Shown here: positions 1 to 35,800 of the stretch, one piece after another
Layout: each line of letters opens with the position of its first letter
Numbering within the stretch: position 1 is the first letter of the stretch
Assembly: GCA_002269645.1 (NCBI GenBank)
Contig: NIVC01003048.1
Span: forward strand, 1 to 41,290
Reading direction: 5' to 3'
DNA length: 41,290 nt
Source of the DNA: Macrostomum lignano
Lineage: Eukaryota
Translations under genes and position numbers: made by a program
The notes under the pieces: generated by a model
Databases searched by the model: none
Told to the model about the DNA's origin: nothing
The model's input: only the letters and a program-made list of their open reading frames with translations

Positions 1-2210
1 TACAGAACAGACCAACAGACAGCCACAGCACCATTAAAGGACAATACAGAACAGACCAACAGACAGCCACAGCACCATTAAAGGACAATACAGAACAGAC
101 CAACAGACAGCCACAGCACCATTAAAGGACAATACAGAACAGACCAACAGACAGCCACAGCACCATTAAAGGACAATACAGAACAGACCAACAGACAGCC
201 ACAGCACCATTAAAGGACAATACAGAACAGACCAACAGACAGCCACAGCACCATTAAAGGACAATACAGAACAGACCAACAGACAGCCACAGCACCATTA
301 AAGGACAATACAGAACAGACCAACAGACAGCCACAGCACCATTAAAGGACAATACAGAACAGACCAACAGACAGCCACAGCACCATTAAAGGACAATACA
401 GAACAGACCAACAGACAGCCACAGCACCATTAAAGGACAATACAGAACAGACCAACAGACAGCCACAGCACCATTAAAGGACAATACAGAACAGACCAAC
501 AGACAGCACAGCACCATTAAAGGACAATACAGAACAGACCAACAGACAGCCACAGCACCATTAAAGGACAATACAGAACAGACCAACAGACAGCCACAGC
601 ACCATTAAAGGACAATACAGAACAGACCAACAGACAGCCACAGCACCATTAAAGGACAATACAGAACAGACCAACAGACAGCCACAGCACCATTAAAGGA
701 CAATACAGAACAGACCAACAACAGCCACAGCACCATTAAAGGACAATACAGAACAGACCAACAGACAGCCACAGCACCATTAAAGGACAATACAGAACAG
801 ACCAACAGACAGCCACAGCACCATTAAAGGACAATACAGAACAGACCAACAGACAGCCACAGCACCATTAAAGGACAATACAGAACAGACCAACAGACAG
901 CCACAGCACCATTAAAGGACAATACAGAACAGACCAACAGACAGCCACAGCGCCATTAAAGGACAATACAGAACAGACCAACAGACAGCCACAGCGCCAT
1001 TAAAGGACAATACAGAACAGACCAACAGACAGCCACAGCGCCATTAAAGGACAATACAGAACAGACCAACAGACAGCCACAGCGCCATTAAAGGACAATA
1101 CAGAACAGACCAACAGACAGCCACAGCACCATTAAAGGACAATACAGAACAGACCAACAGACAGCCACAGCACCATTAAAGGACAATACAGAACAGACCA
1201 ACAGACAGCCACAGCACCATTAAAGGACAATACAGAACAGACCAACAGACAGCCACAGCACCATTAAAGGACAATACAGAACAGACCAACAGACAGCCAC
1301 AGCACCATTAAAGGACAATACAGAACAGACCAACAGACAGCCACAGCACCATTAAAGGACAATACAGAACAGACCAACAGACAGCCACAGCACCATTAAA
1401 GGACAATACAGAACAGACCAACAGACAGCCACAGCACCATTAAAGGACAATACAGAACAGACCAACAGACAGCCACAGCACCATTAAAGGACAATACAGA
1501 ACAGACCAACAGACAGCCACAGCACCATTAAAGGACAATACAGAACAGACCAACAGACAGCCACAGCACCATTAAAGGACAATACAGAACAGACCAACAG
1601 ACAGCCACAGCACCATTAAAGGACAATACAGAACAGACCAACAGACAGCCACAGCACCATTAAAGGACAATACAGAACAGACCAACAGACAGCCACAGCA
1701 CCATTAAAGGACAATACAGAACAGACCAACAGACAGCCACAGCACCATTAAAGGACAATACAGAACAGACCAACAGACAGCCACAGCACCATTAAAGGAC
1801 AATACAGGACAGACCAACAGACAGCCACAGCACCATTAAAGGACAATACAGGACAGACCAACAGACAGCCACAGCACCATTAAAGGACAATACAGGACAG
1901 ACCAACAGACAGCCACAGCACCATTAAAGGACAATACAGGACAGACCAACAGACAGCCACAGCACCATTAAAGGACAATACAGGACAGACCAACAGACAG
2001 CCACAGCACCATTAAAGGACAATACAGGACAGACCAACAGACAGCCACAGCACCATTAAAGGACAATACAGGACAGACCAACAGACAGCCACAGCACCAT
2101 TAAAGGACAATACAGGACAGACCAACAGACAGCCACAGCACCATTAAAGGACAATACAGGACAGACCAGACAGCCACAACACCATTAATGTACAATACAG
2201 GACAGACAGA
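1..2210. repeat. Tandem satellite, 44-bp unit (TACAGAACAGACCAACAGACAGCCACAGCACCATTAAAGGACAA), about 50 copies, runs off the left edge
   Basis: Period 44 read directly (TACAGA at 1 and 45). Variant blocks: CGCCATT at about 950-1085 and TACAGGAC from about 1801. Degenerate end at about 2160-2220. Confidence 0.97.
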
Positions 2211-3736: not shown

Positions 3737-5398
3737 TCACTGGATTGAACATCCACCGCCTCGTGGCGCTGCTGCCGCCTCGTGGCGGATACTCTCACAC
3801 CTCATTCTTTCACGCTCTTCCAGCCTCGCATTTTCGATCTTAAGGTTTATAAGCTCAATCTGTGCAGCGGAACTTTGAGCACTCATGGTTTGCATCTGAC
3901 TTATCTGCCTCCTTAGCTCGTTATTCTTCTCCTCCATCTTTATTCGAGCAACGTCTTGTTTGAGCGCTTCTTCCTGCAGCTTCCTCTCCATCTCCTCTTT
4001 GGAAATGCTCTCCGACTTGATCTGCTCGATTGTTGTCTTGAATGTGGCTTCCATCTCCTGCATCTGCTTCTGCCGGTCTTGAGTCTGCTGCTTTAGGCCC
4101 TCCATCTCGCCCTTCAGCAAGTCCGACTTCTTCTCGGCCGTTAGCTTCTCCGATCTGAGCTGCCTGTTCAGGACAGCCTTGTCTTTCAGCTCGGTTAGGT
4201 CATCTTGGAGCTTCTTTTTCGCTTTCCGGACTTCAGACGAGTCGCTCTCCATGCACTTGGAGTTGAAAGCATCCAGCGCCTCCTTTGAAGCTTCATCAAC
4301 TGCCGCTTGAAACTCTTCGTCACTCTTCGCTGGATCCAAAAAGCTCTTGACTTTGTCTTCGAACAGTCTTTTTGAGTTTGAAGCAGCGGTCATGTTGACC
4401 ATCTCGACAGTGGCGGAGAAAACACTCGACGGAGTTGGCATCCTGCCGCTGCTGAAAGCCTCAAAGTAAACCTCCATGAAGTCGATGAGCTCGCTGCCAG
4501 AGAGCTCATTGCCGTTGACTTTCTTAACTGTGATGTTCTCTGGAGCGGCGATCTTCTCAACAAAGCTCTCGATTTCTTCAACAAACTCCGTCTCTAGTCT
4601 CTGGACATCGCCCGTGAATTTAGAGTCTCTCACTGCTTTGCCTGGATGAGGCAGCAGATAGCAGGAAGCCTTCTCGAAGTGCTTCTTGATTCCCTCTCGT
4701 AGCTCTTTGTTTTCTTGTGGCCTGTCAGCACTACAGTCGAGAACGGTTGACAAGTACTCGCTTCCACCTTCTTCTCCATACTGATGCTCATCTGGGAATT
4801 GCCAGTCTCTGATCAGAAACCACAGATGCTGCAGAGCCTTTCCCTCTGAGCTCTTTGCCAAAGCCGCGAACTCAACGAACAGGCGCAGATTCTGCAGATC
4901 CGCCTCGGAGATGTTCTGCGAAAGGTTGAAGATCTGCACGGAGCTCAGCAGCGTGCTGAACGCAAAGATGGTCGTGCAGTCCTGCTGAGTCGTCTGGTGA
5001 TCGAACGTGCCCTGAGTGTCCATCAGCAGCACGGCCACCTCTTGTCCGTCGGGCTTGCGGATGAAGAACGGCTGCGACCAGAGAAGAATTCCAGTCGTAT
5101 CTCGCTTGGATCCGGACTTCCAGTGGAATCCGCTTCTATGATGGTCATCCGAGTTAATCCAGTCTTCTGTGTTTCCACTTACCAGGGCGGTCAGGTAGCG
5201 CAGAAAGAAGTTGAGCAAGAAGGACTTGCCTTTTCGGAAGGCTCCGGCCACGCAGATGATGGCGATCTTCGCTTTCAACATTCGGTCAAGGTCTTTGACC
5301 TGTGCTGAGATCTTAGGATTCAAACTAAATCCGGTATTTTTCTCATCAGGAATGATGAGTTGTATTGCGGTAGCAGTGGTTTCAGTTGGGCTCGCCAT
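3737..5398 (-). CDS. Atlastin/GBP-family large GTPase, copy 1 (intronless, 553 aa): atlastin-type G domain, helical middle domain, coiled coil, C-terminal CaaX (CSIQ), no TM segment
   Basis: G1 GAFRKGKS, G2 RDTTGI, G3 DTQG, G4 LIRDW, and an atlastin-like middle domain (KKVNGNELSG...ATVEMVN). The first ATG is at 5398; the ORF-track start at 5425 is a TTG. Confidence 0.9.
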   Translation of the reverse strand: MASPTETTATAIQLIIPDEKNTGFSLNPKISAQVKDLDRMLKAKIAIICVAGAFRKGKSFLLNFFLRYLTALVSGNTEDWINSDDHHRSGFHWKSGSKRDTTGILLWSQPFFIRKPDGQEVAVLLMDTQGTFDHQTTQQDCTTIFAFSTLLSSVQIFNLSQNISEADLQNLRLFVEFAALAKSSEGKALQHLWFLIRDWQFPDEHQYGEEGGSEYLSTVLDCSADRPQENKELREGIKKHFEKASCYLLPHPGKAVRDSKFTGDVQRLETEFVEEIESFVEKIAAPENITVKKVNGNELSGSELIDFMEVYFEAFSSGRMPTPSSVFSATVEMVNMTAASNSKRLFEDKVKSFLDPAKSDEEFQAAVDEASKEALDAFNSKCMESDSSEVRKAKKKLQDDLTELKDKAVLNRQLRSEKLTAEKKSDLLKGEMEGLKQQTQDRQKQMQEMEATFKTTIEQIKSESISKEEMERKLQEEALKQDVARIKMEEKNNELRRQISQMQTMSAQSSAAQIELINLKIENARLEERERMRCESIRHEAAAAPRGGGCSIQ

Positions 5399-5639
5399 CG
5401 CAAATATTAAAAAGCTTTTCTTCAAACAACTTTAGCTCAGGCGTGACTCTTGGTACACTGGACTAACAACTTGTTTCCGTCACAGGCTACTTTATACCTT
5501 GAAGAGTTTCTGCTAATAGATTTGGTCTGGCTGCAACTTTAAACTCAAGTGTTCGAGCGCACTGCGTTCCTTGTTTTATAGCTCTTAGTGAACTTCTGAA
5601 AAGCGAAGTTTCCTTTTTCTACTGTACTGTTTACGAAGT

Positions 5640-6150
5640 AGAATCGAAGTTTCCTTACCGCAAGTACACTGGTTAAAAGGGAAGTTCCCTCTCCGCAAGT
5701 ACACTGATTAAAAGGGAAGTTCTCTCTCCGCAAGTACACTGGATAAAAAGGAAGTTCCATCTCCGCAAGTACACTGGTTAAAAGGGAAGTTCTCTCTCCG
5801 CAAGTACACTGGTTAAAAAGGAAGTTCCATCTCCGCAAGTACACTGGTTAAAAGGGAAGTTCTCTCTCCGCAAGTACACTGGTTAAAAGGGAAGTTCTCT
5901 CTCCGCAAGTACACTGGTTAAAAGTGAGGTTCCCTCTCCGCAAGTACACTGGTTAAAAGGGAAGTTCTCTCTCCGCAAGTACACTGGTTAAAAGTGAAGT
6001 TACATTTCTGCAAGTGCATTGGTTAAAAGTGAAGTTCTCTCTCCGCAAGTACACTGGTTAAAGGGAAGTTCCATCTCTACAAGTCCACTGATCAGAAGTG
6101 AAGCTCGATCTCTGCAAGTGCACTGGTTAAAAGTGAAGTTCCTTTTCTGC
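5640..6150. repeat. 35-bp minisatellite (CCGCAAGTACACTGGTTAAAAGGGAAGTTCTCTCT), about 14 copies, upstream of atlastin-like copy 1
   Basis: CCGCAAGT at 5763, 5798 and 5833 gives period 35. Confidence 0.92.
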
Positions 6151-7287
6151 AACTCAGATATCATATGAAATAGACGTCGTATCACGTGACCCTGCTTACT
6201 AAAGTTTTGGACGAAAGGAAATTTAAATTGATCCCCTTCCTCACCCTAACAATTTTGATAGATATGTGCTAAGATTTACTCAGCTGCCGGGGCTCCGGGA
6301 ATCCGGATACAGCGATGTGGCGTTGACGCCCATTCCGCTAACCCCTGGCAACAGCGGGCGGCTAGTGCTGCGGTGTTGTGCAGGTAGATCCGGTTGCGCC
6401 AGTGTTCATAGGTCACTGAAAGGCAAATGGGGGCTAAGGCAAGAGACTGCTGGGCCGTAACCCCAAACCCAACAGCAAGCCAAAAGATAGCGACCAGGAG
6501 TGGCTTAAGCTCTTACTGGAACGACCGCTAGCAACTGAGAAACTCTTCGGCTAAGATCCTGGATTGGAATAACCAGAGGCCAAACCAAAGGTCCATCAGC
6601 ATGGTACTACACTGGGCCCTTGAGAGAGACAGAGAGGCTGTCTCCGGGGCCTGCAGACAAGCCGCGCACCCAAACAGAGGAATTTTGCCAAATTTTGACA
6701 CAACTGGAAAAATGACGGAATTGCCAAAAACGCCTCCCTGAATGCATGCACCAAAGCCCAGCACCGCCAGCAACAGATATTACCGTAAAATTCCAACAAC
6801 TTTTATAATTGGCGTTGTGAGAGCATTCAGTGCATTCATTATTTGCATTAATGAGAACCGAAGTTCCTTTTCTGCTAAAGTGCACTGTTTAGAAGCCAAG
6901 CAGTTCTTCTGCATCAAATCTTCTGCATCAGCCAGTTTTTTTCCCAAGGCTGGAATTCCTGACAATGTTTCGCTTCGCCGGAACCGAGAAAGTCCGGCAA
7001 ACTGTTTTGTTGCACGGAAAGAAGAATGTACTCAAAAAAATTGAGAAGAAAACTTCTAAAACAAGAATGTAACACGAAGGCTCTGACCACAACCCTCCTG
7101 CGACTAAACTTTTATTTAAGGCAAAATAAGAAACAGTTTCTCGTAATAGGCTTATATTTAGATAAGCGAAAGTCCTTGATTTTTGTCTCTGTAAGCATAA
7201 GGCTACAAGTTAATGTTTTAAAATAGTCAACTTACTAACGCACTAGTTAAAAATCGTAAGAACGTTTGTGCAGAATAACTCTCAGCC

Positions 7288-9092
7288 TCACTGCTGTTTG
7301 CATCTCTTGTCGAGCTTGCCGACTTCAGAATCTTCTGTTATTTGGTTTTCTTGAGCATCTGGTCTCTCTCTGTCTTGTGCGATCCCAGATGCCTGGGCTC
7401 GATGCCTTCTATCCGTTCTTTCGTAGTGCTCGTACTCAGCGATGTAGCCTTCTTTTATTTCCTCTGTGCTCAACTTCAAATCATCATGGTGTCTTCTCTC
7501 CTCTTCTGTCTTCCTTCTCGATGGCTCCAGTCTCGATTCCATGGTCCTACGTTGCTCCTCCACCATCGCTTCACTGGCTTGCTTTTGTAGCTCGGCAAGT
7601 TTCGATGTCAATTGCAGGTTTTCCTGCTCCATTTTCCACTGGTTGATCTGGTGCTGCATGCTCTCCTTCTGCAACTTTTTCTCGAATTCGTCTCTTGATG
7701 CCATACCCTGCGAAAGCTCTTTCATGCTCTGCTGGAACCTCTGCTCCATCTCAACCATTCGTCTCGCAACCTCCTCGTTGTCCTTGTGCAGACTCTCGAT
7801 GTCATTGGCGAGCATCTGGTTTCTCTCCTCCTCGGCAATCTTTTCGGATCGCAGCTGGTTCATGAGTCGGTGATGTTGCGACTGCTGCTGAAGGTCTTCT
7901 TCAAGACCCGCCCGGCAGTCAGCCGTGGCTTCAGAGCTCTTCTGCATGCAGTTCTTGTCAAAGTAGGCCAGCGCTTCCAGAGTCGCTGCACCGAGTAGGC
8001 TCTCGAACTCTTCGTCAGTGACCGCGGCTGCTGGATCGACTCGTGAGGCCACTTTCTGTTCGAACAGCTCTTTGGATGCCTTCGACACGGCCAGGTTCGT
8101 CAAGTCCACGGTGGCCGACAGGATGGTGCGCGATGACGGAAGCCTTCCGCTGCGAAAAGCCTCGTAATAGACTTCGGCGAAGGTTATCAGCTCGGAGCCC
8201 GTCAGCGCTCTCCCGTTGACGGCCTTGGAAGCGAGGCACTCAGGTGACAATATTCTAGCGGCAAGTTTATCGATCTCCGCCAGAAACTCCGGGCTGATTT
8301 TGTCCAGCTCTCCGTGAAAATCCTTTCTGGTAACAGCGAATCCGGGATGTGGCAGAAGGCAGCAAGACGTGTTTTCAAAAAACTTTCGGATGCCCTGCCG
8401 AAGCTCCAAGTTTTCCATTGGCTTTTTCGGATCGCACTCCAGGACCTTGTCAAGGTACTGGCGTCCGCCTTCTACACCGAACTCGTACTCATCAGGGTAC
8501 TGCCAGTCTCTGATGAGGAACCACAGATGCTGGAGCACAGAGTCCTGCGAGTCCGAAGCGATCGATGCGAACTCGACAAATAGTCGGAGGTGCTGCAGAT
8601 CTGTCTCCTGGATGTTCTGCGAGATGTTGAAGATCTGACTGAGCTCAGCAGCGTGCTGAAGGCAAAGATTGAGGTGCAGTCCTGCTGAGTGGACTGGTGA
8701 TCGAATGTGCCCTGAGTGTCCATCAGTAGCACGGCCACCTCTTGTCCGTCGGGCTTGCGGATGAAGAACGGCTCGGACCAGATGAGGATCCCGGTGGTGT
8801 CTCTCTCGCTCCCGGATCTCCAGTGGAATCCGTCTGAGAGCCTCTCGTCGGACCGAAGCCACTGCGAAGCATCGCCGCAACTCGCGGCCTTCAAGAAGCG
8901 AAGAAAAAAGTTGAGCAGGAATGACTTGCCCTTGCGAAAGGCTCCGGCAACGCTGATCACAGCAACCTTGCTCTTCTGGAGCCGGTCAGCGGACTGCATC
9001 TCCGCCCAGATGTTTTGGTTCAGTCGAAACCTCTCTGCCCCGGATTCGGTCTCGACCAGAGTTGTGAGTTGCACCGGATGTGGGACCTCCAT
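7288..9092 (-). CDS. Atlastin/GBP-family large GTPase, copy 2 (intronless, about 600 aa if repaired), 1-bp frameshift near 8637, ends in CKQQ; either a pseudogene or an assembly error
   Basis: The N-terminal frame (GAFRKGKS, RDTTGI, DTQG) switches at LLSSV to the frame carrying QIFNISQNI...LIRDW...RCKQQ*. Copy 1 reads TCC GTG CAG ATC where copy 2 reads TCA GT- CAG ATC. The likely ATG is 9092 (MEVPHP); an upstream in-frame ATG lies at 9137. Confidence 0.85.
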
Positions 9093-15593: not shown

Positions 15594-16178
15594 ATGTCCA
15601 AAAGCTACAAGTGCGTGGTGGTAGGCGATGCCTGTGTCGGAAAGACCTGCATGGTGATGCGAATCACCGGACGAGAGCTAGATGAAAAATACATTCCTAC
15701 CATTGTGGAGAACGCAGAGTATAGGTTTCAACACCGCGGCGAGACCCGCATCCTGAATATTTGGGACACAGCTGGGCAAGAAGATTACAGAAACCTGAGA
15801 ACTAAAAGCTACTCTTCTGTGGACGTGTTCCTGCTCTGTTTCAGCCTGGTTGATAGGGACAGCTTTGAAAACTTGAGTTCCGTGTGGCTGCCAGAGCTCA
15901 GAAGTTATGAGAAGGACGCCATAGTTCTGCTGGTGGGCACCAAGCATGATCTCTGCAGAGAAGACGGCAGCCGCAGCGCTGCTGTTAGCCGGGCCAAGAT
16001 CGACGAACTGTGCGGTAGCCATGGCAGCTTAAAATACGTGGAGTGCTCCGCGCTGAAGAACTACGGCATCAAAGAGGTTGTGGAGCAGACGCTGGACTTA
16101 ATATTCGGTGTTCAAGAAGTGAGCAAGGCCCCTTCAGGGCGATCCAGGCGATCAGGAAAACGATGCGACATCCTCTAA
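15594..16178 (+). CDS. Divergent Rho-family small GTPase, intronless, 194 aa, CaaX CDIL
   Basis: GDACVGKT, YIPT, WDTAGQEDY, DVFLLCFSLV, GTKHDL, ECSAL, polybasic tail RSRRSGKR followed by CDIL. Confidence 0.92.
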   Translation: MSKSYKCVVVGDACVGKTCMVMRITGRELDEKYIPTIVENAEYRFQHRGETRILNIWDTAGQEDYRNLRTKSYSSVDVFLLCFSLVDRDSFENLSSVWLPELRSYEKDAIVLLVGTKHDLCREDGSRSAAVSRAKIDELCGSHGSLKYVECSALKNYGIKEVVEQTLDLIFGVQEVSKAPSGRSRRSGKRCDIL

Positions 16179-23800: not shown

Positions 23801-26800
23801 CTATAATATCTGTCTACCTGCAATATCTGTCTACCTGCAGTATCTACCCACATGCAGTATCTACCTACCTACCTGCAGCATCTATCTAACTACTCAGTAT
23901 ATATCTACCTACCACTTTTGAAGTGCAAAACTTCCTATAGATAGCGCATATATCTATCCAGTATCTATCTACCTGCAGCATCCATCTACCTAGTATCGCA
24001 CACCCAAGCGCCCATCTACCCCGTGCAGTGCTCAGCCAAGCTGGACTCACCCAAAATGGCCACCACCTCGTCATCCTGGATGACCTCAAGCGAGCCGCTA
24101 ACAACAAAGCAGAGCTGGTCGAGGCTCTCGCCCTGGTGAAATATCAGGTCCCCGGGCGCCGTGTGCACTGTTGAAAAATTGATGGCGAGCGAGCGGAGGC
24201 AGCCGTCAGAGGCCAATCGAAATGCCGGATGCTCGTTAAACACCTTGCGATTCAGGTGGACACTCAGGTCGGCCTTCATGTCCTTGGGACAGTAGTTCAG
24301 CACCTGGGTTTATTGTTTGAAGTGGCGGGAATTGAGAATCGATTGGTTGCTGGGGCCGCGGCGGGGCTGTTGCGATTGAAAACAAGAATATTGCATAGCT
24401 GATGAGCAGCGCGGGGAAATCAATGCCCCCCACCTTAGTTGTGTCGATGCCTTTGGTGACGGCCCAGGACGAGGTCACGTAGTCCATGACGCGCTCGCCG
24501 AGCTCTCTGGGCACGTCGTGTATTTTGATGAACTCTTTGATGCTGTTCATCATCTCGTGATAGCGGGCCCTGCTGGCGTACATCTGCTGGAAGATGGTGG
24601 TCACGTTGCCGAAGATCGTGGCGTACACCAGCGCTGCGATGGGAGAGGAGGGACCGCCATCGGCTTATTTGGAAATAATTTCATTTACATGACTTTATTG
24701 ACTGAGACTGCACGTACAACCTCTCACAGTGACGAAAGCATCGTGGCCTTCCAAACCACAGTGACCGATGCCCAAACCACAGTGACCGATGCCCAAACCA
24801 CAGTGACCGATGCCCAAACCACAGTGACCGATGCCCAAACTACGGTGACCGATGCCCAAACCACAGTGACCGATGCCCAAACCACAGTGACCGATGCCCA
24901 AACCACAATGACCGATGCCCAAACCACAGTGACCGATGCCCAAACCACAGTGACCGATGCCCAAACATGGATGAATGAATAGAATGGATTGCTATTCTGG
25001 CTCTGGCTATTTTCGTTTTTGACTCTTTTGCATCCGGTTCCCCCCCTTGCCTTTTCATTGGTTGATGATTGCCATAGACAATTTTCGGCCTTCGCCCCTT
25101 TCTTTCGATGCACAAGCGCAAAGAACTGATTTTATTGTAGACGAATCGACTCTCGAATCGTGCTTGTAGGTCTTCCCCCTTTATTTCAAAACACGAGCGA
25201 AAGCGCTTGTGCATCGAAAGAAAGGGGCGAAGGCCGAAAATTGTCTATGGCAATCATCAACCAATGAAAAGGCACGGGGGGGAACCGGATGCAAAAGAGT
25301 CAAAAACGAAAATAGCCAGAGCCAGAATAGCAATCCATTCTATTCATTCATCCATGTGCCCAAACTGTTAGCACTGTGATGAACTTTTATTTATTAGAGA
25401 ATGCACTTTGCTTAGTAGCCGTCAACGGCTGAGAATCCTATTGATGTCTATGGACATTTGTACAGTTTAATTCGGTGGCTTAAAGAGTTGCCAAAATATA
25501 ATTGAAAAGACCAAGCGTCTGCAGAGTTAAGCTAAAGGCTGAGACTCGATCAATTTTCTTACTCGTCCCAAAAAAAAACGAACACTGGCGACGACGGCTG
25601 GTCTTATCGAGCCTCTGGAGACAGAAGCCCCAGCGGAAATTGAGCGCTGGTTCCAACGCTTCGAAGCAGTTTCCAAGCTGAACAAGTGGGATGACACCGC
25701 TCAGAAGTTCGCCCTCATCGCACACCTCGGCAAGAAGGCCTTCGCACTGTTGGCGGATGCGCTATTGCCAGATAAGCCTGACGCCAAGACCTACGCTGAT
25801 CTGAAAACTCAGCTGATCAAGGAGACGAAAGCGGCGAAATCCGAGATTGCATACCGGTACGCGTTCCATCACCTCAAGCAGGACGACGGCGAAGACGTTT
25901 CTGCCTACGCAAGAAGGCTGCGACTGGGTTCGGAGAACTGCGGCTTTTCAACCGCCGAACTGAATGACCGCCTGCGGGATCAATTTATCTTCGGATTGTC
26001 GAACAAGGAGATCGTCAGAAAGTTGCTCACGGAGAAACTGAAAGATCTGACGTGGGAAAAAGTAACTACGGTGGCCAATGCATGCGAGGCCGTAAGTCGC
26101 GGCGAGAGACAAATCTCAGGAGGCGAAATTCTACATGTCAAGTCAGATCCTCCTTCGACATCGAAAGCCCAGAAGCCAGCGTACCAGAAAAGCGACCAGA
26201 AGAACGGCCAATTGCGCCAAGTCAAGTGCTTCTGCTGCGGCAAGGAAGGACATACAAAGGACCAGTGCCACCACCGGACTAAGACATGCCTTCAGTGTGG
26301 TAAGGTTGGCCATCTCAAAGCAGTTTGCAGGTGCGGACCGAACAAAGGTGAACAACGGCCTTCAACGAGCAACAAATGGTCACAAGGAGGCGGACGGCAT
26401 CCAAGGAGCAGAGTCAGAGCAATCGACGATGCAGCTGATCAAGTCGGGCACATTACATTTTCTCGACGATGACGCCGGAAGATGGTCGTGGAAGCAGAAG
26501 GATAACGCGACATGTAGTAGTCAATGGTACGAAAATCAAGATGCTACTGGACACCGGGTCGTGCTCAACGTTCGTGTCAAGCTCGGTGTTTCAAAGCCTA
26601 CTTGAACCAGCAAATGTAAGGCCCACAAGCAGACGATTCGCTGCGTATCAAGGGGATCCAGTGCTAGTGAAAGGCGAAGCTATTGTGAACGCCAAGCTAA
26701 ACTCAGTAAGTTCCGACCTAACTCTGTTTGTGGTGGACAACCCAAAAGCCGAATCTATCTATGGCCTAGATTGGATTGCTGCCCTTGAGCCAGACCTCTA

Positions 26801-29800
26801 CACTTTTATTACAAAATGTACGGTGCCTGAGGAAGACGGCTCGAATCCTACAACGGCGTGCTCTGTAAAAAGATTTTCTGTATCATTGGCCATTGAGGCG
26901 GGAGCAAAGCCCATCTTTTTTAAACCTCGGCAAATTCCATACGGGATTCAGGACGATGTCAAGGCCGAGTTGAAGAGAATGGAAGAGGCTGGACAGCTCC
27001 AGAAGGTGGAATCCAGCGAGTGGGCTACACCCATTGTCTGTGTTCGAAAGCAGTCTGGAAAGGTTCGGATTTGTGGTGACTACAAGGTTACCCTCAACCC
27101 ACTGCTGAAAGACATGGTGTCAACAACGCCCACAATTGACGAAGTTCTGTCAAAACTAGGCCGTGCCCGCCGATTCTCTACGTTGGACCTATCAAATGCG
27201 TACCTCCAAGTACCGGTGGATGAAGACAGCAGCGTGATGCTGACGTGGAGCACTCCGTTCGGCTTATACAGGCCCACTGTATTGGCATATGGAGTAAAGC
27301 AAGTACCAGCAATTTTTCAGTCATTCATGGACAGGTTGCTTCTAAACATAGAAGGTGTCATTTCCTACCAAGATGACATTCTTGTGTGGGGTTTCAACCA
27401 ACAGAGTCATGACAACAGACTGTCCAATGTGCTTCGAATTTTATAGGAGAGTGGACTGAGCATTAACGAGGAGAAATGAACTTTTAACAAGCCATCTATC
27501 ATGTTCCTGGGATATGAGATCAGTGAAAACGGCATTCGTCCACCACCAAAGAAAGCCAAGGAGATTGCAGGATTAGAAGAGCCAAAGAATCTCAAGCAGC
27601 TGCAGTCATTTATCGGGATGGTCGATTTCTACGGACGGTGTATCAAGAATCTCGCGAGCCTGAAAGAACCTCTAACGAAACTGACCAGGTCAGGAACGAA
27701 GTGGGCATGGGGCCCAATCGAGCAGAGAGCCTTTCAGAGCATCAAGGACGAACTACACAATGCAGTCGCTCTCAAGCCTTTTGATCCATCAGATAAGATT
27801 GTTCTCACTACTGACGCGTCACCATCGGGACTTGGTGCAGTCCTCGAGCAGTCGTCCGGGCCCGTAATATTCATTTCAAAGACTCTAACTCAAGCAGAGC
27901 GCAACTATGCTCAAATTGAACGCGAGGCCCTCGCCATTGTATGGGCTGTGAAGCGCTTACACAAGTATTTGCTGGGACACAAGTTCGTCATTCGCACAGA
28001 CCACCAACCGTTAAAGTTCATCTTTGATCCTGGCAGATCCTTGTCAACTGTTGCTGCAGCGAGAGTGCAACGCTGGGCAATCACTTTGATGAGCTACGAA
28101 TACGCCATTGAGTGCAAGAGATCTGCTGAGATTCCCGTGGCCGATGCCCTGTCAAGACTGCAGAACAGCACGTCTGAAGGGGAGCAGTTTGACATTAGCT
28201 CAGTGCAGGACTGCCTACTAGATTTTCCAATCAACCAGGAGCGTTTGAGAAGACAATCGAAAGAGGATTCAGAGCTCCGGAAGTTATTCGCTCCAGTCAA
28301 GTTTGGCTGGAATGCAGAAGGACTTCGAGAACTACAACAGTTTAGCCGATTCAGGGACGAGTTAGTCATTGAGAATGGGTTGCTGTACAGAGGTATTCGG
28401 CTGGTTGTACCAAAGCAGGAGCGTTCTGCAACTTTGCGATTGCTGCACGAAGGACACATCGGACCAGAAAAGATGAAATCCATAGCTAGACAATGCGTCT
28501 GGAGGCCTGAAGTAGATCGAGACATCGAAAAGTATGCGAAAGGATGTAGTTCGTGCCAGGAAAACAAGGATCATGGGGCCACCCGACAATGGACTTCGTG
28601 GCCGGATGAGACCGAATGCTGGTCAAGAGTTCACATGGACTACGCAGGGCCTATGAAGGGAGGAAACTACATGTTGGTACTGATTGATGCGTTTAGTAAA
28701 TGGGCTGAAGTTCACGTGACTAAGGGAACCACTTCATCTGAGACAATCAAGCGACTGCGAAGAACGTTCGCCCAAGAAGGCGTGCCCGTGACTATTGTTT
28801 CCGACAATGGACCTCAATTTGTATCGAAAGAAATGCAAGGTTGGTTAAAAGGAATCAACTGCCGACATGTTCTCACACCACCGTATCATCCAAGGTCAAA
28901 TGGTCTGGCCGAGCGCTTTGTGAGAGATTTAAAAAATCACGTCCGAGCCGCTGAAGAAGACGACCTTCAGAGTTGCGTCGACCGGTTTCTGCTTCAATAC
29001 CGGAACGCAAAACATTCTACGACCGGAAAATCGCCCTCTGAGCTGATGAGAGGTCACCTACTTCGCACCCCTGCATTTTCTCTGGCACGTGAGCCAGTCT
29101 GGGTGAAAACCTACAACAACGAGATGACAAAGTGGAAGTCTGGCGAAGTGGTGGCAACAGAGGGAAAGGTTGTGGTCGACGTTGAGCTGGAGGACGGAAG
29201 GCGTGGACGCTACCATCGTGAACAGACAAAGCCAAGGAGTTCCGGTTCCGATGACCTGGTGGAGATGGAGACTGAAGAACATGTGCACACGGATCAAGAG
29301 TCTGGTCTTCGGAGAAGTAATCGCCATCGGCAAGTACCAAGGCGACTTGAGTACCGCAAGCTTGGTGTACCTACCTAGCTGTTAACTAATGGGAAGGAGT
29401 GTTAGCACTGTGATGAACTTTTATTTATTAGAGAATGCACTTTGCTTAGTAGCCGTCAACGGCTGAGAATCCTATTGATGTCTATGGACATTTGTACAGT
29501 TCAATTCGGTGGCTTAAAGAGTTGCCAAAATATAATTGAAAAGACCAAGCGTCTGCAGAGTTAAGCTAAAGGCTGAGACTCGATCAATTTTCTTACTCGT
29601 CCCAAAAAAAAACGAACACAAACCACAGTGACCGATGCCCAAACCACGGTGACCGATGCCCAAACCACAGTGACCGATGCCCAAACCACAGTGACCGATG
29701 CCCAAACCACAGTGACCGATGCCCAAACCACAGTGACCGATGCCCAAACCACAGTGACCGATGCCCAAACCACAGTGACCGATGCCCAAACCACAGTGAC

Positions 29801-32800
29801 CGATGCCCAAACCACAGTGACCGATGCCCAAACCACAGTGACCGATGCCCAAACCACAGTGACCGATGCCCAAACCACAGTGACCGATGCCCAAACCACA
29901 GTGACCGATGCCCAAACCACAGTGACCCATGCCCAAACCACGGTGACCGATGCCCAAACCACAGAGACTGAAGCCCAAACCACAGAGACTGAAGCCCAAA
30001 CCACAGAGACTAATGCCCAAACCACAGAGATTGAAAGCCCAAACCACAGAGACTGAAGCCCAAACCACAGAGACTTAAGCGCAAACCACAGAGACTGAAG
30101 CCCAAACCACAGAGACTAATGCCCAAACCACAGTGCCCGATGCCCAAGCCCAAACCACAAGTCAGAAATACATTCTATAAGCCGCAACCAAAGCATTAGT
30201 TTCCTTAAGATATTTATAATCAGCGACATGTATTGAGCTCATCTAGTATTGAGTGCATCTACGGCTGCACTCTCTTTGACCACTTCTAATGACTTGCCGG
30301 TAAGCACAAGCTCAATTTGCTATTTCTCTCAGCAGTTCTGTTCCTCTCTCCTTCATCTCATCGCGCTAATTCGGAAGTTTTGTCTGACAAAAACTTGCGA
30401 CATAAGTAGCAGATCTAGATTTAACCTGTTGGCTAACTCGGGAAGAAAAGGGTAATGCAGACGCAGCAGCACAACCCGTCCGTCTGACCAGTCGGGGCCC
30501 TCAGCCTCCACAAAGGCAGCGGGAATGTCACTGCCTTGTTCTTAAGTGCCCAAATAACAGGCGGGCACACAGTTTAACAGCTGCGCGCTGCCCGAGAGCG
30601 GCGCTAATGACAGCCTGCTCAGCCTGTGCTCAGACGGTCATGATGTCGCTTGGGTCCTGAGTACTTGCCGGCCATAGCCGGTGGCTGAGAGAGTCATGAT
30701 GAGGAAGGCGTCACCTGCTCCACGTCCGCTGTCTCCGGGGCGGGGCAGATTTCCACTTCTGTTTTTCCCTCCTCTCTCTCGCAATGTCAATTAGCAAAAT
30801 CCGAGGGAAATCGCGATCAAGGACTGAGATTTTGGGAACTGCTTGGAAAGCGGCGAGCAGGACCGCCTGATGAATGATTAATGCAGTTAGCGGGTGCCGC
30901 ATCTCCTCTTCACCCAGTCCCTCCAGCGCCCTCTCCCATTCCTCATGCGCTTTAAAATCCCCTGACAAATCAGTGAGACTGAAATAGGGATTCTTCAAGC
31001 CCCATCAAACCATGAGCACCGAGCCCCTATAGCTACAGGTCGCTCACCGCCAAGCAGCATGAAAACGACCACTACGGCTTTCTCGCCCTCGGTGTAGGGC
31101 GCTATGTTGCCGAAGCCCACGCTGGTAAGCAGAGACAGAGTGAAGTACAGCGATGTGAGATAGGCCATTGACTTGTCCGGCAGAAGCGACTGGTAGGTGT
31201 TCTTGGTCCAATTCTTGGGTTCCAGCGAGTCATTGGCCAACCGGGGAATCCAGCCGTACCAGATCTCAAGGTCCAGGTCGCGCAGCCCTATGGTGTACCA
31301 GACGCAGGCCATCCAGTGGGCCAGCAGCACGAAGCCGAATATCATTAGGATGAGCAGGGCGGCTCCGTACTCCAGGTACTGGTCAACCTTGCGGGCTACG
31401 CGACCGATGCGCAGCAGTCGCACCACCTTAAGCGCGCTGAATAGGCTGCTGATGCCTCCCTGGTGGATGGTGATGGTCTCGTATGTTGAGAGATAAATAA
31501 AATGGTTTAATACGATATCAAGACAGCCCTTGTCTTTAATTTGAGTTTCTGCTGTGGTCTATGGCTACTGGGTTAATTGATTTTTCTTTGACATCTTTTC
31601 GGATATCTGCTACTGAGATGACGTCTATATTAGCTGCACTTTGACGTTTATTAGGAAATCTAATGGCATCTGCTTGATGCCTTTTGACGTCTATTCAGGC
31701 AGTTTATTAAATGTTCATTAGAGCGTTCATTGACGTCTATTAGAGTGTTAGAGTATTAGGGTGTTCATTGACGTCTACTAGAGTGTTAGAGTATTAGAGT
31801 GTTCATTGACTCTACTAGAGTGTTGATTGGCGTCGACTAAAGTGTTCATTGACGTCTACTAGAGCGTTAGAGTATTAGGGTGTTCATTGACGTCTACTAG
31901 AGTGTTAGAGTATTAGAGTGTTCATTGACTCTACTAGAGTGTTGATTGGCGTCGACTAAAGTGTTCATTGACGTCTACTAGAGCGTTAGAGTATTAGGGT
32001 GTTCATTGACGTCTACTAGAGTGTTAGAGTATTAGGGTGTTCATTGACGTCTACTAGAGTGTTAGAGTATTAGGGTGTTCGTTGACGTCTACTAGAGTGT
32101 TAGAGTATTAGGGTGTTCATTGACGTCTACTAGAGTGTTAGAGTATTAGGGTGTTCATTGACGTCTACTAGAGTGTTAGAGTATTAGGGTGTTCATTGAC
32201 GTCTACTAGAGCGTCGAATGACGCTTATAAGGCGTGTTCTTTGACGCCTGTTGAGGCGTCTACCGACGTTAAAGTCTACTGCTCACTCCCTCCCTTTTTG
32301 GAAATTTTCCTCAGTGAAAAAGGAGTGTTGCATTCTAATTATAATTGTGGCACGGCGCTTCTTTTCAAATACCCTGCCGCGTGTCGTCGAGCCTTCGAGC
32401 TTTTTTGGACCAGCTAGAGACGAGATTGAGCAGGCACACCCAGTCTCGAGTGGAATCTTGAGTCGGAAGATGTTTACTGAGCTCGATCGGTACTCGCAAA
32501 TCAGTATTCTTTTGGGAATTTTGCCCTTGCCTACTAATTGCATGGAGAGTGGAGAGCCACGGAGGACATGGGATTATTGATGCATAAACGCGAGCTTTGT
32601 TGAAAATAGGGGTTTCATGTGGACGCGATTGTTTGGGCAAAAGCAGGTAAAAAGCGATAATTTTAGGTAGCGCGCAGAGGTTCGGAAATCTATCTAGCAC
32701 AACAAAAATCAAATATGAAAAAGTTAACAATTCCGTTGAGCGAACAATGGCGTTCCGCCGGGAAGGCATGCTAAAGCCTTGCTCAAGCGTAGGAATTGGC

Positions 32801-35800
32801 AGATACAGAGTTCAGGTTTTGCCAGCGATTATTCAGTTATGCGGGTACTAATTCCTCATTTTTGCTTTCAAAATTTGGTTTTGGTTTTTATGAGTAATTC
32901 TTTGAGTCACTCGTATTTCTAGTCATTTCGACCGTTACTCACATCTGTTGACTCCGGTTGAAAGGCATTGAACACGTCATAGGGCAGACACGAGAGCAGA
33001 TCAATGACGAACCAGCCTTTCAGGTAATTGACACGAATAATCGACGGGTCGGAGATCACTTCGCCGTTCGGCCCGACAAACGTGGTGTGAAAGTTCAGCA
33101 CAATGTCGATGAAGAAGATCACATCGACGATGCTGTCCGTGACAATGAAGGAGACGTCGTCCATCGTCTTGAACTTGAAAGCTACGTTGAACGGGACCAT
33201 GACCGCCGTGTAGCCCGTGAGGATGAGGATTATCCAGTCCCAGATGGTCTTGAAGGCCGAGTAGTGCAGGATGATGTGCGGCGGCGTCTTTGGTGCCTCC
33301 TGCTTGTACTGCGGCAGGACGTCTGCGTGCAGCGACAGAGCCTGCAGACGGTGCAAGTTGAGGTCTAAGTATGAGAGACTGGCCAGAGAGCTGCAAAGAG
33401 CTGGAGTTCTCAACAACTGGAAATTGACTTTGGTCACTCAAAACACAGATGTTTGTGTTTGAAGGTGGAAAGCCATGGACGGGAAAACATGCTCGGTCGT
33501 GTTTCAATTTTTGCAACAAGAAAAGTTCGAACTAAGACGGAGGAGGTCCTGTTTCCCATTATCCAATTCCACCACTGAGTACCCCAATCGGCTTTGCCAG
33601 TCGAATCCCAATTTCAACTGGGAGATTCACTTCATTACGAGACTATGCTACATGGATTTCCCGTTATCATTTCGCTTTGCCGCCAAATCTCTTTGTAATA
33701 TTTTGTCCCGGCAGTGAATTCCGCTCTTCCTAGGGCGCAATAAGGGGCGAGCCTTCCGTGAGCGGCACCCGCTGCTCACTACTCGCTTCCTCTTTGTAAA
33801 TCGATCCCTAGAGAGCCGGACTCGGTTCGACTTCTGCTTTTTCCCGTCCCCCCCCTCAGTTCGCCCACGAAGGATTCGTCCGTCTTGCTCAGCGGTAATT
33901 CAACTCGACATTCATCGGTCTGAGCTGCCGACCGGCTCTGGGGAGGCAGTTCCGAGTTCCGACCGGCTCGCTGACAAATATTGAGACCGACTTGGCAGCT
34001 CTGTGCACGAATTCTGAGTGACAAAGAGCTCGCCCTTGCGGTCCAACCCCTATTGGCTCTCACCTGTCGTGAAATAAATTTATATTGAATTCGGTCGAGC
34101 GCAGCAGCAGCCGATGATGCTCAGACCCGTCACTCAGACTAATTGACTCGCATCCGCGCGCACTTATTGACTCTCGCGCGACTGTTTAAGAGACTGGAAA
34201 AAAATTTACTGTCAAGGGATTAGCCCCGCAGCTAAGGGAAGTCAGTCTGCTGCATAGTAAGCATCTCACAAGAGCTCTGTTGGACAGAGAGCTGGCTTAG
34301 CAAAGGGAAAGATCTGAACTTAGACGCTGCATTGCATCGAGGGCTTCGCTTCCCATTAGTCGAATTTTTTTCAAGCGAATCTCACAGGGATTAGGCAAGA
34401 ACCACTTGAAGTTTTGCTAGGGCAGGACGGTGCACTCGCGATTCCTGCAATTTTTGTACGCCCGGTGTCGCCTCAAAACGCATTAGCAAGGTATGTAAAT
34501 GTACTGCTCAGACTTTTGTGCCCCCAATCAGTGTTTTTGGCTGCAATCCAGGTGCTATCCAGTTTATAATCGTGTCTGCAATGTCTGACGAAGCTAGGAA
34601 TAAATCTTTGCACAGACTGAACACTCGCTGCTGATGTATCTATGCGGAGAGTAGCTGGAAAATTTCCCATCTAATGCTTCCCGAGGCCTACTAGTATGCC
34701 ACAATGCTGACCTATGTAGAATGCACCGTCCTGATAAAGCAGTCAGTCCATTGTGGATTAGCGAGCAAAAGAAAATGGGAAGGCACATGTCTGGCTAATG
34801 CGCTAATCCTCCGGCCATGCGGTGAGCGCTGGGCGCAGAGCTGACTTTCGCTCTACGAACCCTGGTTCGATTCCGTGCGCGGCTGCAGTTTCATCCGTGG
34901 CTTGTGCCCGAAAATTGGCCACGGGGCTTGTCTTGCCACTCAAACCCATGGGGTCAACCACCAAGGCACAAATAATGAACATGGCTGACTAATCGTCAGG
35001 AAGTCAGGCTTGTGTGAGCGTGTGTATGAGGGCGTGCTTTCGTACAGCATTGGCGCGCTTGCATGTGTTCAGGAGTCAGTGGAATGGGCTGAATTGCCTC
35101 ACCCCTGGTATGTGGGACGATTTTGTTGATCCAGGTGTTTACAACTCATCTCACTGCAGTTATGATAATGATGATGATTATTATTATGCACTGAGCACCG
35201 CTCACCGAGCCAAGCTGATCCAGCCGAGAGTCATCCATGCGTCCGCCAGGGGGTACGTTAGCCATCGGCACCATGACCGAGCGGTTGCGGGTCACCGACC
35301 GGGCCAGGCGGGCGAACTTGCTGAGTCCGACTGCGGGTACAGCGGGTTTGAGTACCACTGAAGCTGCCTGCAACTTTCTAAGCCATCCTGAGTTCCTTAA
35401 GCAATTCTAGGCCACTGAAGCTATCCTGAACTCCTGAAGCCATCCTGAACCCTTGAAGCCATCCTGAGCCCCTGAAGCCATCCTGAGCCCCTGAAGCCAT
35501 CCTGAACCCCTGAAGCCATCCTGAGCCCCTGAAGCCATCCTGAGCCCCTGAAGCCATCCTGAGCCCCTGAAACCATTCTAAACCCATGAAACTATCCAGA
35601 GCCCCTGAAGCCATCCTGAGCCCCTGAAGCCATCCTGAACCCCTGAAGCCATCCTGAGCCCCTGAAGCCATCCTGAGCCCCTGAAGCCATCCTGAGCCCC
35701 TGAAACCATTCTAAACCCATGAAACTATCCTGAGCCCCTGAAGCTATCCTGAACCCCTGAAGACATCCTGAACCCCTGAAAACATCCTGAACCCCTGAAG

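What the first reader, a model, noticed from the sequence alone, without database searches (positions are those of the whole stretch)
3737..9092. Tandem intronless atlastin-head, GBP-tail GTPases: transmembrane anchor replaced by a coiled coil and prenylation
Seen: both proteins carry atlastin-type signatures (GAFRKGKS, DTQG, IRDW, where GBP1 has GLYRTGKS and DTEG) and an atlastin-like helical domain. Where atlastins have two hydrophobic segments, these have about 150-200 aa of E/K/Q-rich sequence and end in Cys-x-x-x. Established: atlastins are TM-anchored ER fusogens, whereas GBP1/2/5 are soluble prenylated immune GTPases with a long helical tail that coat pathogen membranes. Inference: this is an atlastin-derived, duplicated, intronless subfamily that has independently acquired a GBP-like architecture and may be an invertebrate cell-autonomous immunity or membrane-remodelling system.
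Basis: partly seen in the sequence, partly recalled or inferred. Interest (0 to 1): 0.8.

Follow-up and report, generated by a model that had tools for sequence, protein, structure and literature searches.

The report
Prenyl-tailed atlastin-like GTPase gene cluster
The flatworm Macrostomum lignano has a small cluster of genes for atlastin-type GTPases that lack the usual membrane-spanning anchor and instead carry a long helical tail ending in a lipid-attachment signal; anchor-less atlastins with antiviral activity are already known from silkworm, so this is a new variant, not a new kind.

Summary
The window comes from Macrostomum lignano. Gene 1 (3737-5398, minus strand) is an intact single-exon ORF of 553 aa. 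It has an atlastin-type G domain (PDB atlastins E 1e-88 to 1e-75, RNF112 7e-38, GBPs about 1e-11), an atlastin three-helix bundle, no transmembrane segment, two predicted helices of about 76 residues each, and a C-terminal CSIQ. Gene 2 (7288-9092) is its paralogue (49% protein identity). In this window it carries a 1-nt deletion (TT to T at 8638/8639) that is absent from another genomic copy, and it ends in the atypical CKQQ.

The two genes are the edge of a cluster of at least five old paralogues plus pseudogenes. Purifying selection is seen where synonymous sites are not saturated. Four of the five paralogues end in Cys-x-x-x. The genome has a canonical atlastin gene with an intron and a transmembrane region, but no canonical GBP was found.

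The tail shows no detectable homology to the GBP helical domain, so the resemblance is analogy. Anchor-less atlastins with a coiled coil and antiviral activity are already published (BmAtlastin-n, silkworm). Anchor-less atlastin-likes with CaaX endings also occur in a mite, a barnacle, an amphipod, a beetle and a mealybug, and CaaX endings are strongly enriched among the anchor-less forms. An immune role is untested.

Verdict: a real feature and a new variant of a known kind.

The parts
3737..5398 (-). Gene 1: intact single-exon CDS, 553 aa plus stop; atlastin-like GTPase without transmembrane segments
   Evidence: ORF. 100% identical to database protein P0003 of M. lignano. CDS identical at nucleotide level in three genomic copies.
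4532..5305 (-). Gene 1 G domain (Pfam GBP N-terminal domain, residues 32-289), atlastin type
   Evidence: Pfam E 3e-63. PDB atlastins E 1e-88 to 1e-75, against GBPs about 1e-11.
5222..5245 (-). Gene 1 P-loop GAFRKGKS, including the Arg at the position of atlastin-1 R77
   Evidence: Translation check. Aligned to the atlastin P-loop.
5009..5020 (-). Gene 1 G3 motif DTQG
4802..4813 (-). Gene 1 G4 motif IRDW
4154..4432 (-). Gene 1 middle domain, residues about 323-415: atlastin-type three-helix bundle
   Evidence: The sequence alignment to Drosophila atlastin runs to residue 404. AF2 helices 323-353, 360-381 and 388 onward. Foldseek rmsd about 2 A over 96-99 columns to the ATL1/ATL3 bundle.
3770..4153 (-). 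Gene 1 helical tail, residues 416-543: the third bundle helix continues to residue 463, a short break follows at 464-466, then a second helix of about 76 residues (467-543). E/K/Q/R-rich, no transmembrane segment.
   Evidence: AF2 pLDDT 80-97 in this region. Composition and heptad pattern. No Pfam family.
3740..3751 (-). Gene 1 C-terminal CaaX box CSIQ, preceded by a Gly linker (PRGGG); the stop codon is at 3737-3739
   Evidence: Cys at -4 is kept in 4 of 5 paralogues.
8639..9092 (-). Gene 2, 5' part: codons 1-151 plus the first base of codon 152; P-loop at 8922-8945, DTQG at 8709-8720
8638..8639 (-). Gene 2 frameshift site: one T of the GTT (Val152) codon is missing relative to the intact copy on contig C3765
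   Evidence: Intact in UniProt models P0001 and P0002.
7288..8637 (-). Gene 2, 3' part in the shifted frame: rest of the G domain (IRDW at 8503-8514), three-helix bundle, helical tail of about 200 aa, ending CKQQ (7291-7302) plus stop (7288-7290)
   Evidence: The intact 601-aa version is read from L005.

Best explanation
The genes encode cytosolic GTPases of the atlastin branch of the dynamin superfamily. These proteins attach to membranes peripherally through a C-terminal lipid anchor instead of the atlastin transmembrane hairpin.

Proposed mechanism:
1. Cys550 of CSIQ is farnesylated, the last three residues are removed, and the new C-terminus is methylated. This is the standard CaaX pathway.
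2. GTP binding drives head-to-head dimerisation of the atlastin-type G domains. The three-helix bundle swings against the G domain as in atlastin.
3. The long two-helix tail acts as a spacer or self-association module that presents the lipid anchor.
4. [quoted passage not shown]

The genes belong to an old, tandemly duplicated, lineage-restricted family that shows gene birth and death.

Shown here: domain content, absence of a transmembrane segment, intact catalytic motifs, the helical tail, conservation of the CaaX ending, purifying selection, and presence of prenylation enzymes in the genome.

Inferred: prenylation itself, dimerisation, membrane binding, and the biological role. My preferred role, held weakly, is a GBP-like surveillance or defence function.
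For: Identity of the head and bundle:
- Atlastin-type head and bundle.
- All GTPase motifs are intact in the five paralogues.

Anchor and tail:
- No transmembrane segment, and no hidden atlastin transmembrane exon in the window.
- Two helices of about 76 residues at pLDDT 80-97.
- Cys-x-x-x is kept at the extreme C-terminus in 4 of 5 paralogues despite tail divergence: CSIQ, CKQQ, CVLM/CPLM, CVMM. One is preceded by a polybasic RKPKRS.
- Among relatives, CaaX is found almost only in anchor-less forms (10/42 against 1/157, p = 6e-7).
- Within one mite clade the C-terminus alternates between Gly-linker plus CaaX and Gly-linker plus a short hydrophobic tail. This is what an interchangeable membrane-anchor module would look like.
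- Prenyltransferase beta-subunit and ICMT genes are present in the genome.

Functional genes, not relics:
- dN/dS is 0.05-0.45 between paralogues where synonymous sites are not saturated.
- Between the two gene 2 copies there are 8 synonymous and 5 non-synonymous differences.

Support for a defence-like role:
- A tandem array with shared pseudogenes.
- No canonical GBP found in the genome.
- The silkworm anchor-less atlastin is antiviral (PMC4926086).
- Parallel tandem arrays occur in a mite (beside a serpin cluster) and a beetle.
Against: - No transcript, protein, prenylation or localisation data could be reached.
- CKQQ (gene 2) is a poor CaaX, and one paralogue (587 aa) has none.
- Whether the two long helices form a hairpin could not be measured, because model coordinates are not exposed.
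- The full-length model has only moderate confidence (pLDDT 72, 7-sequence alignment).
- No signal of positive selection could be assessed, because synonymous sites are saturated.
- Nothing links the genes to infection.
- The absence of GBP comes from an exon-by-exon six-frame search.
Confidence: 0.55

Rival explanations
1. The proteins are regulators of the canonical atlastin. As peripheral or soluble paralogues they would heterodimerise through the conserved G-domain face with the transmembrane-anchored atlastin of the ER and so tune or inhibit ER tethering and fusion. This would be a housekeeping or tissue-specific ER-shaping role, not defence.
For: The G-domain core (residues 86-180: switch regions and the surrounding block) is the best conserved part of the family. 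pN there is 0.03-0.12 among the paralogues. The G domain overall is 48% identical to the M. lignano canonical atlastin. From established knowledge, the soluble cytosolic domain of atlastin inhibits ER network formation and fusion in vitro.
Against: A regulator would not obviously need five divergent paralogues with fast-evolving tails and their own membrane anchors. The family lies outside the canonical clade on a long stem. There is no interaction data.
Confidence: 0.2
2. The ORFs are incomplete gene models. Further exons downstream, or alternative splicing, would add the usual atlastin transmembrane hairpin, and the Cys-x-x-x endings would be incidental.
For: No transcript evidence was available. 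Database gene models for this locus are inconsistent and fuse neighbouring paralogues (P0001, P0002, P0121).
Against: The stop codon follows Cys-x-x-x directly in four paralogues whose tails differ in length (553-601 aa) and sequence. tblastn with atlastin transmembrane and C-tail regions finds nothing in the window (best E 1.4). The same anchor-less, CaaX-ended architecture appears in independent annotated genomes.
Confidence: 0.05
3. The genes are decaying retrocopies of atlastin with no function.
For: They are intronless whereas the canonical gene has an intron. Gene 2 is frameshifted in this window, and true pseudogenes exist in the cluster.
Against: Five distinct long ORFs remain intact although synonymous sites are saturated. 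dN/dS is well below 1. All GTPase motifs are intact. The gene 1 CDS is identical in three copies while its flanks differ. The gene 2 deletion is a TT-to-T length change that is absent from another copy.
Confidence: 0.03

Closest known systems
Canonical atlastins (human ATL1-3, Drosophila atlastin): ER membrane fusogens
   Same: G domain with GAFRKGKS / DTQG / RDW motifs, 41-47% identity over the G domain and bundle to many animal atlastins. PDB E 1e-88 to 1e-75. Three-helix bundle superimposable at about 2 A.
   Different: No two-segment transmembrane hairpin and no atlastin C-terminal amphipathic helix. Instead a helical extension of about 130-190 residues and a CaaX ending. Single-exon CDS. 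The family lies outside the well-supported canonical clade that runs from sponge to bilaterians and contains M. lignano's own atlastin.
BmAtlastin-n and silkworm Atlastin3/4 (PMC4926086): transmembrane-less atlastin paralogues; BmAtlastin-n is cytoplasmic and restricts BmNPV and Nosema
   Same: Atlastin-type GTPase domain, coiled-coil region, no transmembrane segments, several paralogues in one genome. A GBP-like role has been proposed for them (PMC9005921).
   Different: The silkworm proteins are longer (745-770 aa) and have no CaaX (P0148 and P0189 end in RMKY and NYAL). They form their own Lepidoptera clade (100/99). A common origin with the flatworm family is neither supported nor rejected (AU p = 0.13).
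GBP1/2/5: vertebrate interferon-induced prenylated GTPases
   Same: Overall plan: large G domain, helical middle domain, long helices, C-terminal CaaX (one paralogue also has a polybasic stretch before it, as in GBP1), and tandem multigene clusters. Foldseek aligns the full-length model with GBP1 over 539 columns (E 6e-16).
   Different: The G domain is far from GBP (PDB E about 1e-11, against 1e-88 for atlastin). Pfam GBP_C is below threshold and covers only the bundle. The tail shows no sequence, profile or fold match to GBP alpha12/13 (TM-score about 0.35, rmsd 17-60 A).
RNF112 (PMC12012479; PDB 9jju-9jjx)
   Same: Atlastin-like G domain plus helical middle domain. Intermediate sequence similarity (E 7e-38).
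   Different: RNF112 has an N-terminal RING domain, a predicted transmembrane helix and an amphipathic helix. None of these is present here.
Anchor-less, CaaX-ended 'atlastin-like' proteins annotated but not studied in arthropods: mite Halotydeus (CTLL, CSIL), barnacle Amphibalanus (CTIL, CVIM), amphipod Hyalella (CSTL), beetle Zophobas (CTIS), mealybug Planococcus (CGLM)
   Same: The same architecture of atlastin head, helical E/K/Q-rich tail and CaaX. Tandem arrays in the mite and the beetle.
   Different: At most 44% identical to the flatworm proteins, and each is closer to canonical atlastin. They are scattered in the tree, and the CaaX state needs at least 5 changes even on well-supported branches only. 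Repeated origin is therefore likely.

Membership tests
Atlastin (ER fusogen, strict sense) | GBP/atlastin-class G domain with atlastin-type motifs and best similarity to atlastins | tested here: met
Atlastin (ER fusogen, strict sense) | Three-helix-bundle middle domain after the G domain | tested here: met
   Alignment to Drosophila atlastin up to residue 404. Foldseek rmsd about 2 A to the ATL1/ATL3 bundle.
Atlastin (ER fusogen, strict sense) | Two closely spaced hydrophobic membrane segments | tested here: not met
   Maximum KD19 after the G domain is 0.56, against 2.24 in the atlastin P0031 (closest relative of the M. lignano canonical atlastin).
Atlastin (ER fusogen, strict sense) | C-terminal amphipathic helix after the transmembrane segments | tested here: not met
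   The C-terminus is a Gly linker plus CaaX. The best 18-residue hydrophobic moment at the end of gene 1 is 0.34.
Atlastin (ER fusogen, strict sense) | Placement inside the canonical metazoan atlastin clade | tested here: not met
   The family lies outside the 96/96 canonical clade. Sister position to the M. lignano canonical atlastin is rejected at AU p = 0.02. That test was post hoc and long branches are involved.
Atlastin (ER fusogen, strict sense) | GTP-dependent homotypic ER membrane fusion | not testable with these tools
   Requires a liposome fusion assay or in vivo ER assays.
Guanylate-binding proteins (GBP1/2/5 type) | G domain of GBP type (closest to GBPs) | tested here: not met
   PDB GBPs E 1e-11 to 4e-9, against atlastins 1e-88. 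In the tree, hGBP1 is a distant outgroup.
Guanylate-binding proteins (GBP1/2/5 type) | GBP C-terminal helical domain (Pfam GBP_C, alpha7-alpha13) | tested here: not met
   22.7 bits, below the 24.3 cut-off, and over the bundle only. The tail has no match.
Guanylate-binding proteins (GBP1/2/5 type) | C-terminal CaaX prenylation signal | tested here: met
   The motif is present: CSIQ in gene 1, CVLM and CVMM in paralogues, CKQQ (atypical) in gene 2. Prenylation itself was not tested.
Guanylate-binding proteins (GBP1/2/5 type) | Induction by infection or cytokines and coating of pathogen membranes | not testable with these tools
   No expression data could be reached.
Transmembrane-less atlastin paralogues (BmAtlastin-n type) | Atlastin-type GTPase domain plus a coiled-coil region and no transmembrane segment | tested here: met
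   definition from PMC4926086
Transmembrane-less atlastin paralogues (BmAtlastin-n type) | Common descent with the Lepidoptera clade | tested here: inconclusive
   Separate clades in a polytomy. A constrained joint clade is not rejected, AU p = 0.13.
Transmembrane-less atlastin paralogues (BmAtlastin-n type) | Restriction of intracellular pathogens | not testable with these tools
   Needs infection assays.
Sey1p/RHD3 | RHD3-type G domain and long stalk with C-terminal transmembrane segments | not tested
   No Sey1/RHD3 sequence was included in the tree. Pfam reports GBP, not RHD3_GTPase, for these proteins.

The most novel reading that the evidence does not exclude
Atlastin scaffolds may have been converted repeatedly and independently (in a flatworm, mites, crustaceans and insects) into peripheral, prenyl-anchored GTPases with long helical tails. 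These would serve as the cell-autonomous membrane-defence system of invertebrates that lack GBPs, making them convergent functional analogues of vertebrate GBP1/2/5. The M. lignano cluster would be the first such system in a genetically tractable flatworm.
Probability: 0.2. Interest if true: 0.8.

Novelty: new variant of a known kind. Interest (0 to 1): 0.55.

Why it matters
Atlastins are regarded as integral-membrane ER fusogens, and GBPs as the prenylated immune branch of the same GTPase class. This locus shows the atlastin head and bundle joined to a different, lipid-based anchoring solution. The survey shows that this solution (anchor-less plus CaaX) recurs in several invertebrate lineages, often as tandem arrays.

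A published review asks directly whether atlastins took over GBP functions in animals that lack GBPs (PMC9005921). No canonical GBP was found in the M. lignano genome. RNAi and transgenesis are established methods in this species (my own knowledge, not checked here), so the question becomes testable.

The locus is also a natural experiment on what the atlastin G-domain and bundle machine can do without its transmembrane hairpin.

Tried and rejected
- Looked for a hidden transmembrane exon with tblastn, using three atlastin C-terminal regions against the window. Nothing was found.
- Tested homology of the tail to GBP four ways, all negative: Pfam on the tail alone gave only sub-threshold generic coiled-coil families; BLASTP against hGBP1 residues 311-592 gave E 8.5; hhalign gave 1.4% probability; Foldseek with a tail-only model gave no hit at E <= 0.001 and matched only the atlastin/RNF112 bundle.
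- Looked for orthologues outside M. lignano in the 90%-identity and 50%-identity protein collections. None was found. The best outside relatives are at most 44% identical to the flatworm paralogues and are closer to canonical atlastin. The closest tree neighbour in FastTree (P0243, CCIL) is only 32% identical, and the pairing vanished in the careful tree.
- Looked for transcript evidence. The exact-protein contig look-up returned nothing for gene 1. Literature searches for M. lignano plus atlastin and for the gene identifiers returned nothing.
- Tried to decide between a single origin and repeated origins. The tree is a polytomy. One AU test rejected a recent origin from the M. lignano canonical gene (p = 0.02). 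Another did not reject union with the silkworm clade (p = 0.13).
- Bacterial promoter and terminator scans, Rfam and tRNA scans were uninformative.
It was used only after it scored 1309 bits end to end against PDB 1DG3.

Full report
**Origin and observation**

The window is contig C3048 (positions 1-41290) of a 764-Mb Macrostomum lignano assembly.

Gene 1 (3737-5398, minus strand) is one uninterrupted ORF of 553 aa. It contains GAFRKGKS, DTQG and IRDW and ends in CSIQ followed by a stop. All coordinates were checked by translation.

Gene 2 (7288-9092, minus strand) is its paralogue, 49% identical in protein. In this window it is broken by one missing base. The Val152 codon GTT reads GT, between 8639 and 8637. 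The copy on contig C3765 is intact (601 aa, ends CKQQ). Apart from the deletion it differs from the window copy by 8 synonymous and 5 non-synonymous substitutions. UniProt models from another assembly also read through this point. A third copy, on C951, carries four different 1-nt deletions. A TT-to-T length change that is private to one copy looks like a long-read consensus error or a haplotype-specific lesion, not family-wide decay.

**What the proteins are**

- Pfam finds the GBP N-terminal domain (E 3e-63). It finds GBP_C only below threshold, and only over residues 296-427.
- Against solved structures by sequence, the ranking is atlastins (1e-88 to 1e-75), then RNF112 (7e-38; PDB 9jju, PMC12012479), then GBP1/2/5 (1e-11 to 4e-9).
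- Database hits are animal atlastins at 37-47% identity.
- There is no transmembrane segment. The highest 19-residue Kyte-Doolittle mean is 1.36-1.39, and it lies in the G-domain core. After the G domain nothing exceeds 0.56 in gene 1, whereas the atlastin P0031 (575 aa, the closest relative of the M. lignano canonical atlastin) reaches 2.24.
- tblastn with atlastin transmembrane and C-tail regions finds nothing in the window.
- The tail is 46-47% E/K/Q/R, almost free of Pro and Gly, and has a heptad-like pattern.
- AlphaFold2 gives pLDDT 72 for the full length and 88 for residues 318-553. It predicts helices 323-353, 360-381, 388-463 and 467-543.
- Foldseek places the first three helices on the atlastin/RNF112 three-helix bundle at about 2 A rmsd. 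The long extension has no specific structural match. The GBP alignments are long but have rmsd 24-60 A (for the full-length model, ATL1 1e-22 against GBP1 6e-16 with TM-score 0.35).
- The tail has no Pfam family, no BLASTP similarity to the hGBP1 helical domain (E 8.5) and no profile similarity (hhalign 1.4%).

So the head is atlastin, and the 'GBP tail' is an analogy of design, not homology.

**The family in the genome**

The genome holds a cluster that is best seen on contig C3765 between 32.8 and 72.4 kb:

| Member | Length | C-terminus |
|---|---|---|
| paralogue | 595 aa | CVMM |
| pseudogene (frame breaks and a TAG, shared with the copy on C951) | - | - |
| paralogue | 556 aa | CVLM (CPLM on C951) |
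| paralogue | 587 aa | no CaaX; hydrophobic end ...SPILSAAVPTALRLWFQS |
| gene 1 | 553 aa | CSIQ |
| gene 2 | 601 aa | CKQQ |

- C951, C3048 (this window) and C952 are near-identical copies of parts of this cluster.
- The gene 1 CDS is identical at nucleotide level in all three copies, while the 3 kb of flanks differ by 3-16 substitutions and 8-21 small indels.
- The paralogues are old. Synonymous sites are saturated (pS 0.6-0.9) everywhere except residues 86-180 (pS 0.23-0.57), which suggests gene conversion in the G-domain core.
- dN/dS is 0.05-0.45 where it can be measured.
- The canonical atlastin is present in three copies (C939, C291, C3329). It has an intron of about 406 nt and a second exon that carries the transmembrane region. 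The anchor-less genes lack that intron.
- A Pfam GBP-domain search of the whole genome finds only canonical atlastin, this cluster, and weak hits that prove to be URGCP/GVIN-like giant GTPases. No canonical GBP appears.
- Prenyltransferase beta-subunit and ICMT genes are present.

**Relatives elsewhere**

No orthologue exists outside M. lignano in the collections searched. All outside relatives are at most 44% identical to the flatworm paralogues and are closer to canonical atlastin.

The architecture, however, is not unique. Anchor-less atlastin-likes with helical tails and CaaX endings occur in these animals:

- mite Halotydeus destructor (CTLL, CSIL)
- barnacle Amphibalanus (CTIL, CVIM)
- amphipod Hyalella (CSTL)
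- beetle Zophobas (CTIS)
- mealybug Planococcus (CGLM)
- unnamed metagenome or transcriptome proteins (CTIL, CGIF, CCIL)

Anchor-less forms without CaaX occur in ticks, the nematode Diploscapter, Diptera and Lepidoptera.

Cys at position -4 is present in 10 of 42 anchor-less proteins against 1 of 157 scored as anchored (Fisher p = 6e-7). The single exception, P0204, itself has a coiled-coil end.

In the mite, four such genes sit in tandem within 11 kb, next to three serpin genes. Within that clade the C-terminus switches between Gly-linker plus CaaX and Gly-linker plus a short hydrophobic tail. The beetle has a tandem pair.

**Phylogeny**

The tree used IQ-TREE (LG+C20 PMSF) on 71 sequences, with G-domain and bundle columns only. 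hGBP1 was the outgroup after its sequence was verified against PDB 1DG3.

- It recovers a canonical atlastin clade from sponge to bilaterians (96/96) that includes M. lignano's canonical gene.
- The five flatworm paralogues form their own clade (100/100) on a long stem.
- That clade sits in a polytomy with the mite, barnacle, tick, nematode, dipteran and lepidopteran groups (FastTree on 206 rows agrees).
- The CaaX state needs at least 5 changes even if only well-supported branches are trusted.
- Forcing the flatworm family to be sister to the flatworm canonical atlastin is rejected (AU p = 0.02). That test was post hoc and long branches are involved.
- Forcing it together with the Lepidoptera clade is not rejected (p = 0.13).

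The tree therefore cannot say whether these are many independent derivations from atlastin or an old, fast-evolving sister lineage.

**Prior knowledge**

Liu et al. 2016 (PMC4926086) described BmAtlastin-n, a 770-aa silkworm atlastin homologue.

- It is cytoplasmic, is enriched in the midgut, and restricts BmNPV.
- Silkworm Atlastin3 and Atlastin4 also lack transmembrane segments.

A review (PMC9005921) reports resistance to microsporidia as well. It asks explicitly whether atlastins adopted GBP functions in invertebrates without GBPs. Bombyx proteins P0148 and P0189 fall in the Lepidoptera clade of my tree and have no CaaX.

I found no paper that describes a prenylated or CaaX-bearing atlastin-like family, or this flatworm family.

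**Mechanism and verdict**

The best-supported reading is a peripheral, farnesyl-anchored atlastin-type GTPase.

- It would dimerise through its G domains on GTP binding.
- It would use the bundle plus a long helical extension to tether, coat or remodel membranes.
- Full fusion is unlikely without the transmembrane hairpin and the amphipathic helix. This last point rests on established atlastin biochemistry, not on a test here.

The biological role is open. Three things favour a defence-like role: the tandem, birth-and-death organisation; the absence of a detectable GBP; and the silkworm precedent. A role as a modulator of canonical atlastin is a serious rival.

The 'GBP tail' and the immune role are analogy. 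Novelty is reduced by BmAtlastin-n. The new elements are the lipid-anchor variant, its recurrence across invertebrates, and its presence in a tractable flatworm.

Noticed in passing
window 1-2207: The contig begins with a 44-bp satellite (50 copies, 99% matches). The assembly probably breaks here, which would explain why the rest of the atlastin-like cluster seen on contig C3765 is missing from this window.
   Followed up: partly
window 5646-6142: A 35-bp minisatellite (14 copies) lies in the 1.9-kb spacer between gene 2 and gene 1. TATA-like elements sit about 100 and 180 nt upstream of the gene 1 ATG.
   Followed up: no
window 15594-16178 (+): A single-exon small GTPase of the Ras superfamily (Pfam Ras, E 4e-41), Rho-like by its motifs, ends in CDIL. 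That is a geranylgeranyl-type CaaX. It is a second prenylated GTPase gene 6.5 kb from gene 2.
   Followed up: partly
window about 24751-30147 (+): A Ty3/gypsy-like LTR retroelement. Three consecutive ORFs (25543-26472, 26439-27446, 27480-29378) carry gag, aspartyl protease plus reverse transcriptase, and RNase H plus integrase. It is flanked on both sides by arrays of the same 21-bp repeat (24751-24966 and 29619-30147). Observed only.
   Followed up: partly
window 30995-31558 and 32919-33437 (-): Two ORF pieces match the Pfam Ion_trans family (E 7e-14 and 2e-12). They are probably exons of a cation-channel gene with introns.
   Followed up: no
window 4859-5143 (gene 1 residues 86-180) and the matching part of gene 2: The G-domain core is nearly identical among otherwise saturated paralogues, including stretches of about 60 nt with identical third codon positions (pS 0.23-0.57 against 0.6-0.9 elsewhere). 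This suggests gene conversion within the cluster.
   Followed up: partly
database proteins P0001, P0002, P0121: Public gene models fuse neighbouring paralogues into proteins with two or three G domains (954, 774 and 1384 aa). P0001 joins gene 2 residue ~415 to gene 1 residue 4. These are either prediction artefacts or read-through transcripts.
   Followed up: no
G000 contigs C3842:26628-27029, C44:42679-43074, C2884:39278-39673: Very long open frames (1756-2389 aa) encode URGCP/GVIN-like giant GTPases (URGCP_GTPase E 5e-97). This is another family related to vertebrate interferon-inducible GTPases in this flatworm.
   Followed up: partly
L051 (Halotydeus destructor contig JAIUWE010000095.1): Four tandem atlastin-like genes (508, 519, 606 and 624 aa) lie directly beside three tandem serpin genes.
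   Followed up: no
L007 (C3765:32791-34341), 595-aa paralogue: Its P-loop reads GAFRTGKS. The RTGKS is as in GBP1 (GLYRTGKS), whereas all other paralogues have RKGKS.
   Followed up: no
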